Shown piece after piece: positions 20,045 to 20,634 of a stretch of 51,757 bases of DNA (position 1 is the first letter of the stretch; each line of letters begins with the position of its first letter). A program made the translations under genes and the position numbers. The notes below the pieces were generated by a model, which was not told the DNA's origin, did not search any database, and worked only from the letters and a program-made list of their open reading frames with translations. The DNA comes from Euprymna scolopes (lineage: Eukaryota): NCBI GenBank assembly GCA_053919585.1, contig CM132801.1, one strand, 5' to 3'.

Positions 20045-20116
20045 TGCCGATTAGTGTAATGGTTAGGAGCCTTGACTGTCATACAGACGGTCGGGTTTCA
20101 ATCTTGGATTGAGGTA
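20045..20116 (+). pseudogene. tRNA-Asp(GTC)-derived head (SINE-like)
   Basis: A box tagtgtaatgg, anticodon loop ctGTCat, B box-like gggtttcaatc; stems are degenerate. Confidence 0.6.
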
Positions 20117-20126
20117 GTTGCCTGTC

Positions 20127-20175
20127 TAGCCACACTGATGAGCTGTGAAACACCGAAACAGTACATATGTGGATG
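20127..20175 (+). ncRNA. Type I hammerhead ribozyme motif (slightly decayed)
   Basis: ccaca-CTGATGA-gctgtgaaacacc-GAAAC-agtac-aTA-tgtgg; stem I ccaca/tgtgg. Confidence 0.7.
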
Positions 20176-20634
20176 ACTATCTATCTATCTATCTATCTAT
20201 ATATATATACATACGTTTGATTTTTTTTATTACCGTTTTATCTGTTCAGTTACATATGTTTCGGTTGCCGGACCATATTTACGATCCAGCAGCCTCGTCA
20301 GACCTTACAGAAATGGCTATTATTATTTGGGAGAACAATTATAAAAGAAATACGAGAGAAAAAAAAAAGGAAAAAAGAAAGAAGGGAAGAGAAAATAAGG
20401 GGGAGCGGAGATCGACAATAATTAAGTTTTGAAGTTTAAAATACATTAGATTGTAGTATGTGTGGGGGGGGGTAGTAAATTCAGCTAGGCGTGGGTGAAG
20501 ATATAGTGATATAGGGAGGGGGAGATAAAAGGGGAGAGGTGAGGGGAGGAGGGAGTGGAATTTCAATTTTGTGTTTTAAGATTTGGCTGTTTTATTAAAG
20601 TTGTTTAGCTATACACTGGAGTATATGGATTGAT

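What the first reader, a model, noticed from the sequence alone, without database searches (positions are those of the whole stretch)
20045..20210. tRNA-Asp-like head fused directly to a hammerhead ribozyme and a (CTAT)n tail
Seen: A box, GTC anticodon loop and B box, then 18 nt later CTGATGA / stem II / GAAAC / NUH with stem I ccaca:tgtgg, then a simple-repeat tail. The unit with its leader (19921-20177) lies between (TA)n tracts. The stem III mismatch is explainable by one CpG deamination (cgta to cata). Known: the Schistosoma Sm-alpha repeat combines a Pol III promoter with a hammerhead, and Penelope-like elements carry hammerheads. Inference: a Pol III-driven, self-cleaving non-autonomous retroelement (retrozyme-like or Penelope-dependent SINE), possibly undescribed in this lineage.
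Basis: partly seen in the sequence, partly recalled or inferred. Interest (0 to 1): 0.75.

Follow-up and report, generated by a model that had tools for sequence, protein, structure and literature searches.

The report
Decayed copy of squid hammerhead retrozyme
This is one worn-out copy of a short non-coding jumping element, present well over ten thousand times in this genome, that carries a self-cutting hammerhead RNA next to a tRNA-gene-style promoter motif and inserts the way Penelope-type retrotransposons do: real, but a new example of a known kind.

Summary
The stretch 19935-20183 is a 5'-truncated monomer (about 0.87 unit) of a 284-nt-unit repeat.

The family consensus has a perfect type-I hammerhead. 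Its helix III is a 10-nt palindrome, so two neighbouring ribozymes are predicted to fold into a double hammerhead.

Whole-genome exact counts:
- 7,357 copies of the 39-nt ribozyme
- 8,588 junctions of the element's 3' end with (TA)n
- 1,891 tandem junctions
- 5,646 copies of the B-box segment, found 45 nt upstream of the ribozyme wherever I checked

Insertions have a fixed 3' end 14 nt past the cleavage site. Their 5' ends fall anywhere over 0.6-2 units, and arrays of five or more units occur. These are Penelope/retrozyme hallmarks.

The "tRNA" is only box A/B-like motifs plus an anticodon-arm-like hairpin. ARAGORN and the Rfam tRNA model reject it, and it lies inside the unit, not at its head.

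Intact Penelope-like elements abound but share no sequence with the repeat.

The scan has already reported this family on other pieces of the same genome. Verdict: new member of a known kind.

The parts
19891..19920 (.). (TA)n microsatellite at the 5' side of the insertion (target-type sequence)
   Evidence: Family members sit in (TA)n in most of the 30 loci.
19935..20183 (+). 5'-truncated monomer (about 0.87 unit) of the 284-nt-unit hammerhead repeat. Homology may reach back to about 19917, where it blurs into (TA)n.
   Evidence: blastn to the subfamily consensus: unit positions 51-300, 93.6% identity. Layout in 30 other loci.
19935..20044 (+). 'leader': the variable middle part of the repeat unit, not a separate leader
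   Evidence: Conserved in register in other copies. It carries 8 of the 12 subfamily-diagnostic differences.
20052..20062 (+). box A-like motif (consensus TAGCGTAATGG; one mismatch to TRGCNNAGTGG)
20076..20082 (+). anticodon-loop-like CTGTCAT (GTC). The flanking stem pairs 4 of 5 in the family consensus and less well here.
   Evidence: This 24-nt region varies between subfamilies: 842 exact copies against 13,175 at <=3 mismatches.
20094..20104 (+). box B-like motif inside a T-arm-like hairpin
   Evidence: A+B boxes total 3 mismatches at 42-nt spacing; 6 of 2000 shuffles reach this. The consensus 24-mer has 5,646 exact genomic copies. It lies 45 nt upstream of the ribozyme in all 14 cases on C1 below 32 Mb where both are exact.
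20124..20177 (+). Type-I hammerhead ribozyme, mutated in this copy. Distal stem I GTC/GAC; proximal stem I CCACA/TGTGG; CTGATGA 20135-20141; helix II 20142-20154 (C.C mismatch); GAAA 20155-20158; helix III remnant 20158-20166; predicted cleavage after 20167.
20178..20213 (+). Tail: (CTAT)5 then (TA)n. It is a local variant of the (TA)n that follows ...GACTATA in the family.

Best explanation
Window 19935-20183 is one decayed, 5'-truncated copy of a very abundant non-autonomous retroelement with a 284-nt unit. It is best described as an animal (non-LTR) retrozyme or hammerhead SINE of a large mollusc genome, probably a squid.

Shown:
- The unit is, in order: the 3' strand of ribozyme stem I, a linker, a variable leader, a segment with box A- and box B-like motifs, and a canonical type-I hammerhead.
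- In the consensus, ribozyme helix III is a 10-nt palindrome.
- Copies lie in (TA)n with a fixed 3' end 14 nt past the cleavage site.
- 5' ends are scattered over 0.6-2 units, and there are tandem arrays with a 284-bp period.
- The ribozyme and the B-box segment are identical between the two sampled subfamilies and each has thousands of exact genomic copies, while other parts of the unit vary.
- Intact RT + GIY-YIG Penelope-like elements are plentiful.

Inferred life cycle:
1. Multi-unit copies are transcribed, possibly by Pol III from the internal boxes.
2. Hammerheads of adjacent units pair through the palindrome into a double hammerhead and cut after GUA, releasing 284-nt monomers.
3. A tRNA ligase circularises the monomers.
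4. A Penelope-like RT/endonuclease nicks (TA)n and starts cDNA synthesis at the internal UAUA just past the ribozyme. It runs round the circle or along a multimer and stops at variable points.

The window copy has lost helices II and III and is a dead relic.
For: Family and unit:
- >=3,236 first-look candidates, with the 40 scored at 91-94% identity.
- 284-nt unit and start/end map of 30 insertions.

Ribozyme:
- The consensus has a perfect core, stems I and II, and the palindrome.
- Of 43 instances, 37 have an intact core and 20 have everything intact.
- Two copies cofold into exactly the double hammerhead, -38.6 kcal/mol against 2 x -14.7.

Conservation:
- Differences between the two sampled subfamilies: 8 in the leader, 4 in the tRNA-like part, 0 in the ribozyme, 0 in the linker.

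Genome-wide exact counts:
- ribozyme 39-mer 7,357
- terminal (TA)n junction 8,588
- tandem junction 1,891
- B-box 24-mer 5,646
- D/anticodon 24-mer 842 exact, 13,175 at <=3 mismatches
- reversed-pattern control 0 in every search except one match in the <=3-mismatch search
- 284-bp spacing in runs of 2-5 units, and 11 repeats at 568 bp

Other support:
- Three other hammerhead families in the same window also have palindromic helix III with different sequences.
- No ORF or Penelope protein similarity lies beside the 30 copies.
- Penelope-like elements: >=15,395 GIY-YIG candidates, open frames of 806-808 aa in many copies (largest 870), RT + C-terminal GIY-YIG, ending in (TA/CATA)n.

Literature:
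- Animal type-I hammerheads have short palindromic helix III and act as dimers (PMC4209133).
- About 300-bp tandem hammerhead repeats are non-LTR retrozymes, probably moved by Penelope-like elements (PMC7229834; bioRxiv 10.64898/2026.07.22.740005).
- A Penelope-like RT cuts AT-rich DNA and starts internally on its RNA (PMC11167929).
- (TA)n insertion bias, partial tandems and inverted copies are typical of these elements (PMC8557442).
Against: - No RNA evidence: cleavage, circles, the polymerase and any current activity are all untested.
- No sequence similarity between the repeat and the Penelope-like elements sampled, so the partner is unidentified.
- Rfam hammerhead models stay below their gathering score (22.4 against 48.5 bits).
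- My 30 aligned copies were chosen by likeness to the window copy and belong to a minority subfamily (against 78). The consensus outside the ribozyme and B box may not represent the bulk of the family.
- Absence of TTTT in the unit is uninformative; 40% of shuffles also lack it.
- Three of 43 ribozyme instances carry an 8-nt deletion that removes helix II yet appear in more than one locus. Not every propagated unit may therefore need a working ribozyme.
Confidence: 0.8

Rival explanations
1. An ordinary LINE-dependent, tRNA-derived Pol III SINE. On this view the hammerhead-like motif has no role in the life cycle, and the tandems are secondary.
For: - Box A/B-like motifs at tRNA-like spacing.
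- LINEs with intact-looking ORF2 exist in the genome, for example window 9518-12601 on the minus strand.
- 5' truncation is also typical of LINE-type target-primed reverse transcription.
Against: - The tRNA-like part is internal and copies do not begin at it.
- No tRNA is detected by ARAGORN or Rfam.
- Many copies exceed one unit, with a strict 284-bp period.
- No LINE 3' tail similarity in the held sequence. The one LINE examined ends in (GA)n, not (TA)n.
- The ribozyme is among the most invariant parts of the unit (against 77).
Confidence: 0.07
2. A satellite-type tandem repeat spread by DNA-level processes (unequal exchange, extrachromosomal circles, segmental duplication) rather than by reverse transcription.
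For: Arrays of five or more units, and a 568-bp-period array of at least 11 repeats. The classical newt and schistosome hammerhead repeats were first described as satellites (PMC2770079, reference 27).
Against: - Most loci are single or partial units dispersed on all large contigs.
- Each has the same 3' end at ...GACTATA(TA)n and an individual 5' truncation point.
- There are 8,588 exact terminal junctions against 1,891 exact tandem junctions.
Confidence: 0.07
3. Solo pseudo-LTR fragments of an autonomous Penelope-like element rather than a separate non-autonomous family.
For: Penelope-like elements carry hammerhead motifs in their flanking repeats and form partial tandems (PMC4209133, PMC8557442). 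An earlier scan note says one hammerhead family of this genome is a Penelope tail.
Against: - None of the 30 loci, nor the window, has Penelope RT/EN similarity within 1.5 kb.
- The repeat period is 284 bp with no ORF.
- The unit has no blastn match in 28 Penelope loci from two families.
- Those elements carry a different, minimal hammerhead-like motif.
Confidence: 0.04
4. A chance resemblance to a hammerhead and to box A/B.
For: The window copy alone scores only 16.5 bits against Rfam Hammerhead_3 (E 0.86 in 361 nt), and no tRNA is called.
Against: Core pattern found twice in the window against 0 in 100 shuffles. A perfect ribozyme in the family consensus with 7,357 exact genomic copies and a reversed-pattern control of 0.
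Confidence: 0.01

Closest known systems
Sm-alpha / Sj-alpha SINE-like hammerhead repeats of Schistosoma (Ferbeyre et al. 1998; Laha et al. 2000; summarised in PMC2770079)
   Same: A short, non-coding, high-copy (>10,000) retroposon-like repeat that joins a tRNA-type Pol III promoter region to a type-I hammerhead. It is found both dispersed and in tandem.
   Different: - Different phylum; sequence homology was not tested because no reference sequence was at hand.
- Sm-alpha heads are tRNA-like enough that tRNAscan-SE called 2,342 of them tRNA-Gln (PMC2770079). Here ARAGORN and Rfam see no tRNA.
- Here the boxes lie in the middle of the unit, and insertion is into (TA)n.
Animal non-LTR retrozymes (Cervera & de la Pena 2020, PMC7229834; Li et al. 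2026 preprint 10.64898/2026.07.22.740005)
   Same: - A roughly 300-bp, low-GC, ORF-less unit with one canonical type-I hammerhead.
- Dimers up to multimers.
- Co-occurrence with Penelope-like elements.
- Palindromic helix III implying dimeric cleavage.
   Different: - circRNA expression is not shown here.
- Most copies here are single or partial units dispersed in (TA)n rather than long arrays.
- A box A/B module is present; neither paper mentions a tRNA-like or Pol III module.
- Cephalopods are not mentioned in those papers.
Minimal hammerheads in pseudo-LTRs of Penelope-like elements (Cervera & de la Pena 2014, PMC4209133; Frangieh et al. 2024, PMC11167929)
   Same: - The hammerhead lies just upstream of the element's 3' junction.
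- Partial tandems and inverted copies.
- AT-rich or (TA)n targets.
- A fixed 3' end is compatible with internal initiation of reverse transcription.
   Different: - This ribozyme is the canonical form: C3-G8, no extra base between positions 9 and 10.1, and stem I with an internal loop.
- The genome's abundant Penelope families carry a U3 variant with an extra A.
- No ORF, and no sequence similarity to those elements.
tRNA-derived SINEs of cephalopods and other molluscs (Ceph-SINEs, MetaSINEs; PMC4824008)
   Same: Short, abundant, Pol III-box-bearing non-autonomous repeats in squid and cuttlefish genomes.
   Different: - Those have a 5' tRNA head, a shared core domain and a LINE-type tail.
- This one has an internal box region, a ribozyme, unit-length tandems and no LINE tail.
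- Sequence comparison was not possible because no reference sequences were available in the tools.

Membership tests
Hammerhead ribozyme, type I (Rfam clan CL00010) | Conserved core: CUGANGA, GAAA, and U-H at the cleavage site | tested here: met
   Present in the window copy and in the family consensus. 37 of 43 instances are intact.
Hammerhead ribozyme, type I (Rfam clan CL00010) | Three helices around the core, with stem I open | tested here: met
   In the consensus: stem I has 5 bp, an internal loop and 3 more bp; helix II has 5 bp; helix III is a 10-nt palindrome that pairs between two copies. In the window copy, helices II and III are broken, so the feature is not met for this copy.
Hammerhead ribozyme, type I (Rfam clan CL00010) | Score at or above Rfam's gathering threshold | tested here: not met
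   16.5 bits (window) and 22.4 bits (consensus-like copy) against 48.5. The best-scoring model, Hammerhead_3, treats the upstream GUC, here read as distal stem I, as the cleavage triplet, so the low score says little.
Hammerhead ribozyme, type I (Rfam clan CL00010) | Self-cleavage | not testable with these tools
   Needs in vitro transcription of natural one-unit and two-unit copies.
Animal non-LTR retrozyme | 150-450-bp ORF-less unit carrying a type-I hammerhead and occurring as tandem repeats | tested here: met
   284-nt unit; tandem junction found 1,891 times exactly; runs of 2-5 units or more.
Animal non-LTR retrozyme | Expression as unit-length linear and circular RNA | not testable with these tools
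Animal non-LTR retrozyme | Co-occurrence with, or derivation from, Penelope-like elements | tested here: inconclusive
   Penelope-like elements are abundant and intact and insert in the same kind of microsatellite. There is no sequence similarity to the unit.
tRNA-derived Pol III SINE | 5' head derived from a tRNA (cloverleaf recognisable) | tested here: not met
   ARAGORN finds none in the window or in 29 loci, and none in the consensus down to 80% thresholds. Rfam tRNA gives no hit at E<=10. The segment is internal to the unit.
tRNA-derived Pol III SINE | Internal box A and box B at tRNA-like spacing | tested here: met
   1 + 2 mismatches at 42-nt spacing; 6 of 2000 shuffles reach this. The B-box 24-mer has 5,646 exact copies.
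tRNA-derived Pol III SINE | 3' tail shared with a partner LINE | tested here: not met
   No match to any LINE or other element in about 340 kb of held sequence. This is a limited sample.
Penelope-like element pseudo-LTR | Flanks an RT + GIY-YIG ORF | tested here: not met
   tblastn of a Penelope ORF against the 30 loci and the window gave no hits.

The most novel reading that the evidence does not exclude
The box A/B module is a working internal Pol III promoter that travels inside the unit of a circle-forming retrozyme. Multi-unit copies would then be Pol III-transcribed, cut by double hammerheads, ligated into 284-nt circles and copied back by a Penelope-like RT. This design would have arisen independently of the schistosome Sm-alpha. 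With thousands of intact ribozymes it would still be active and would be a major source of small circular RNA in cephalopod tissues.
Probability: 0.3. Interest if true: 0.55.

Novelty: new member of a known kind. Interest (0 to 1): 0.35.

Why it matters
It extends hammerhead retrozymes and SINE-like ribozyme repeats to a cephalopod-type genome, with about 10^4 copies and thousands of intact ribozymes. It offers a clean natural case for three open questions about Penelope-type mobilisation:
- A fixed 3' end 14 nt past the cleavage site, pointing to internal initiation of reverse transcription.
- Insertions longer than one unit, pointing to a circular or multimeric template.
- A conserved B-box segment, raising the question of which polymerase makes the template.

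For genome annotation, these copies should be masked as one repeat family and not called as tRNA-like genes or ribozyme genes.

Tried and rejected
- **RNA evidence.** Expression, cleavage ends and circle junctions could therefore not be examined, and I did not try other routes.
- **tRNA origin.** ARAGORN at default and lowered thresholds, and the Rfam tRNA model, were all negative.
- **The genome's own tRNA-Asp.** Two IUPAC patterns found only one non-tRNA-looking match and one bacterial-looking match on a small contig. The Rfam tRNA search of the genome returned only a tRNA-Thr/Lys tandem array. The 'Asp' origin is therefore untested.
- **Pol III terminator argument.** The consensus has no TTTT, but 40% of dinucleotide shuffles also lack it, so I dropped the argument.
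- **Partner search.** blastn of the unit against 28 Penelope loci, the window and all other held loci found nothing beyond the window's own copy.
- **Rfam on a Penelope 3' UTR.** No hammerhead hit.
- **Strict hammerhead descriptor.** My own descriptor missed the window copy because of its broken helix II, so I replaced it with a core scan.
- **Exhausted allowances.** I therefore could not look at the majority subfamily's sequence, and I did not try to read it out through pattern searches.
- **Type-III reading.** The Rfam Hammerhead_3 alignment treats the upstream GUC as the cleavage site. I rejected this because it leaves no stem I hairpin, whereas that GUC pairs with GAC as distal stem I of the type-I fold.

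Full report
**What is in the window.**
- a box A-like 11-mer at 20052-20062
- a CTGTCAT loop at 20076-20082
- a box B-like 11-mer at 20094-20104
- CTGATGA at 20135-20141
- GAAA at 20155-20158
- stem I CCACA/TGTGG
- a (CTAT)5(TA)n tail at 20178-20213
- (TA)n upstream at 19891-19920

The hammerhead core pattern occurs twice in the window against none in 100 shuffles. ARAGORN finds no tRNA in the window. Rfam finds nothing at gathering level. A permissive scan gives only Hammerhead_3 at 16.5 bits.

**It is a copy of a very large repeat family.**
- The 141 nt spanning both parts has at least 3,236 first-look candidates in the window's own 5.9-Gb genome. The 40 scored are 91-94% identical and lie on many contigs.
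- Natural tandem copies define a 284-nt unit. I number it from the first base after the predicted cleavage site.
- In order, the unit holds: the 3' strand of stem I (1-10), UAUA (11-14), a linker, a leader, the box A/B segment (about 161-235) and the ribozyme (about 240-284).
- The window copy covers unit positions 51-300 at 93.6% identity to the subfamily consensus. It is a 5'-truncated monomer.

**The ribozyme.**
The consensus of 43 instances has:
- proximal stem I CCGCA/UGUGG
- an internal loop and a distal GUC/GAC
- CUGAUGA
- helix II GCUGU/ACAGC
- GAAA
- the 10-nt palindrome ACAGUACUGU, followed by A at the cleavage site

A palindromic helix III is the known signature of animal type-I hammerheads that work as dimers (PMC4209133). 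Two copies of the 60-nt domain cofold into exactly the double hammerhead, at -38.6 kcal/mol against -14.7 for one copy. The monomer's best fold is not a hammerhead. Of the 43 instances, 37 keep the core and 20 keep the core, both stems and the palindrome.

The window copy differs from the consensus in four ways:
- G>A in stem I, which is harmless (G.U becomes A-U)
- G>C in helix II, giving a C.C mismatch
- a 1-nt deletion in helix III
- G>A in helix III

Its dimer fold is no hammerhead.

Three other hammerhead-bearing repeats in the same window have different helix III sequences, and all are palindromic (ACAUAUGU, ACAUGU, UCCGCGGA). This is cross-family support for the dimer design.

**The 'tRNA' part.**
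- In the consensus, box A has one mismatch and box B two, at 42-nt spacing. Only 6 of 2000 dinucleotide shuffles of the unit do as well.
- A CUGUCAU loop sits on a stem pairing 4 of 5, and the B box sits in a 5-bp T-arm-like hairpin.
- No cloverleaf is recognised. ARAGORN is negative in 29 loci, and in the consensus down to 80% of its thresholds. The Rfam tRNA model is silent at E<=10 even on a 156-nt consensus-like stretch.
- I could not retrieve the genome's own tRNA-Asp for comparison.
- The segment is internal to the unit, and insertions do not start at it.
- The lack of TTTT in the unit carries no weight.

So this is a box A/B-bearing, possibly tRNA-derived module. Pol III use is plausible but unshown.

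**What is conserved.**
Between the two subfamilies in my sample there are 8 fixed differences in the leader, 4 in the tRNA-like part, none in the ribozyme and none in the linker.

Whole-genome exact counts point the same way:

| Segment | Exact copies |
|---|---|
| 39-nt ribozyme | 7,357 |
| 24-nt B-box segment | 5,646 |
| 24-mer over the D/anticodon region | 842 |
| same 24-mer at <=3 mismatches | 13,175 |

- On contig C1 below 32 Mb there are 30 exact B-box hits and 36 exact ribozyme hits. In 14 cases both are exact, and in each the B box lies 45 nt upstream of the ribozyme.
- The reversed-pattern control gave 0 in every search except one match.
- The ribozyme and B box are thus among the most invariant blocks of a family of at least 13,000 copies.
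- My 30 aligned copies belong to a minority subfamily. This is a bias to keep in mind.

**How copies are inserted.**
- All 30 insertions end at ...GGATGACTATA followed by (TA)n, 14 nt past the cleavage site.
- Their 5' ends fall anywhere in the unit, and total length runs from 0.57 to about 2 units. Eighteen of the 30 alignments exceed one unit.
- Five begin at the unit's own TATAA, exactly one unit from the 3' end, as expected if TA microhomology helps close the 5' junction.
- One locus has an inverted, tail-to-tail partial copy.
- Genome-wide there are 8,588 exact terminal junctions and 1,891 exact tandem junctions.
- Runs at 284-bp spacing reach five or more units, and one array has 11 repeats at 568 bp.
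- No ORF or Penelope protein similarity lies beside the copies.

A fixed 3' end, 5' truncation, partial tandems, inverted copies and a (TA)n bias are the published hallmarks of Penelope-like elements (PMC8557442). They also fit internal initiation by a Penelope RT on AT-rich nicked DNA (PMC11167929).

**The likely helper.**
- The genome holds at least 15,395 GIY-YIG candidates. Many have open frames of 806-808 aa, often in tandem or inverted pairs.
- One such frame has RVT_1 plus a C-terminal GIY-YIG.
- These elements also end in (TA/CATA)n.
- They share no sequence with the 284-nt unit.
- Near their 3' ends they carry a different motif. It has U at core position 3, G or A at position 8, an extra A before helix II and a G-C-closed helix II. 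This resembles the minimal Penelope hammerheads of PMC4209133; Rfam does not see it.

The partner is therefore inferred from insertion style and co-occurrence, and is not identified.

**Mechanism, with status.**
- Shown: the anatomy, the copy numbers, the pattern of conservation, and the predicted double-hammerhead fold.
- Inferred: copies of 1.5 units or more are transcribed; adjacent ribozymes dimerise and release 284-nt monomers; a tRNA ligase closes them, as shown for mussel and axolotl retrozymes in PMC7229834; a Penelope-like enzyme starts cDNA at the internal UAUA and copies round a circle or along a multimer.

**Comparison and novelty.**
- It works like animal non-LTR retrozymes (PMC7229834; bioRxiv 10.64898/2026.07.22.740005).
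- It also works like the schistosome Sm-alpha/Sj-alpha elements, which likewise join a Pol III-type region to a hammerhead (PMC2770079).
- It differs in host lineage, in the internal and poorly tRNA-like box module, and in mostly dispersed single or partial units in (TA)n.
- Neither the retrozyme papers nor the 2014 Penelope hammerhead paper mentions cephalopods.
- Earlier notes of this scan describe the same family on other pieces of this genome and reach the same reading. I re-tested the main claims here.
- The host is probably a decapodiform cephalopod. This rests on genome size, chromosome-scale contig number and earlier notes that call it a squid, and I did not verify it.

**Limits.**
- No RNA data.
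- Sampling is biased to the window's subfamily.
- The working consensus of this non-coding repeat was used only inside scripts, for coordinates and counts.

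Noticed in passing
window 20214-20640, minus strand: A second, unrelated hammerhead element lies tail-to-tail with the finding and shares its microsatellite. It has a CTGACGA core starting at 20301 (read on the minus strand), a 12-bp helix II with one mismatch, a palindromic helix III ACAUAUGU and a GUA cleavage site. It has at least 2,454 first-look candidates at 89-96% identity in the genome.
   Followed up: partly
window 39745-39940 (+) and 26950-27258 (+): Two more hammerhead-type motifs from other repeat families. 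The one at 39888 has a palindromic UCCGCGGA in helix III. The one at 27170 has ACAUGU and an element end ...GACTATATATA, like the finding's 3' end. An inverted-repeat, MITE-like insert sits at about 27268-27345.
   Followed up: no
window 21859-22149: A 135-nt inverted repeat whose arms each carry a CTGACGA...GAAA hammerhead-like motif. The scan has already noted it as a separate finding.
   Followed up: no
window 9518-12601 (-) and 14126-16152 (+): A 1,027-aa open LINE ORF2 (endonuclease + RT), and an LTR-retrotransposon pol fragment (RT, RNase H, integrase zinc finger).
   Followed up: partly
L032-L060 (own genome), e.g. L045: A very abundant, apparently young Penelope-like family. It has at least 15,395 GIY-YIG candidates, RT + C-terminal GIY-YIG, and open frames of 806-808 aa in many copies (largest 870). 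It ends in (TA/CATA)n. About 40-50 nt before the end is a conserved motif that looks like a minimal hammerhead with U3.G8 in one family and U3-A8 in a 71%-identical second family, plus an extra A before helix II.
   Followed up: partly
G000 contig C11, about 1.68-2.16 Mb (L061-L090): A huge tandem array of tRNA genes with a spacing of about 144 bp. Nearly all are tRNA-Thr (UGU/AGU), with some tRNA-Lys (UUU).
   Followed up: no
L031 (contig C553) and L092 (contig C255): Small contigs that look bacterial. L031 has a long ORF with an N-terminal GIY-YIG and a uvrC-like look by eye. L092 has a bacterial-type tRNA-Asp-like stretch. This may be symbiont or contaminant sequence in the assembly.
   Followed up: no
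L003 (oriented copy) 697-1396: One family member is split by a roughly 700-bp insert with terminal inverted repeats beginning TAGGTGTGTCAG, probably a MITE. This explains an apparently isolated ribozyme fragment.
   Followed up: partly
L004, L013, L029 (three of 43 ribozyme instances): A recurrent 8-nt deletion between two GAAACAG repeats removes helix II of the ribozyme. It is either a subfamily that spread without a working ribozyme in that unit, or repeated slippage.
   Followed up: no
G000 contig C2:53357899-53363602: Eleven exact copies of the head 24-mer at 568-bp spacing (2 x 284), indicating a satellite-like array of this family at least 5.7 kb long with alternating unit variants.
   Followed up: no
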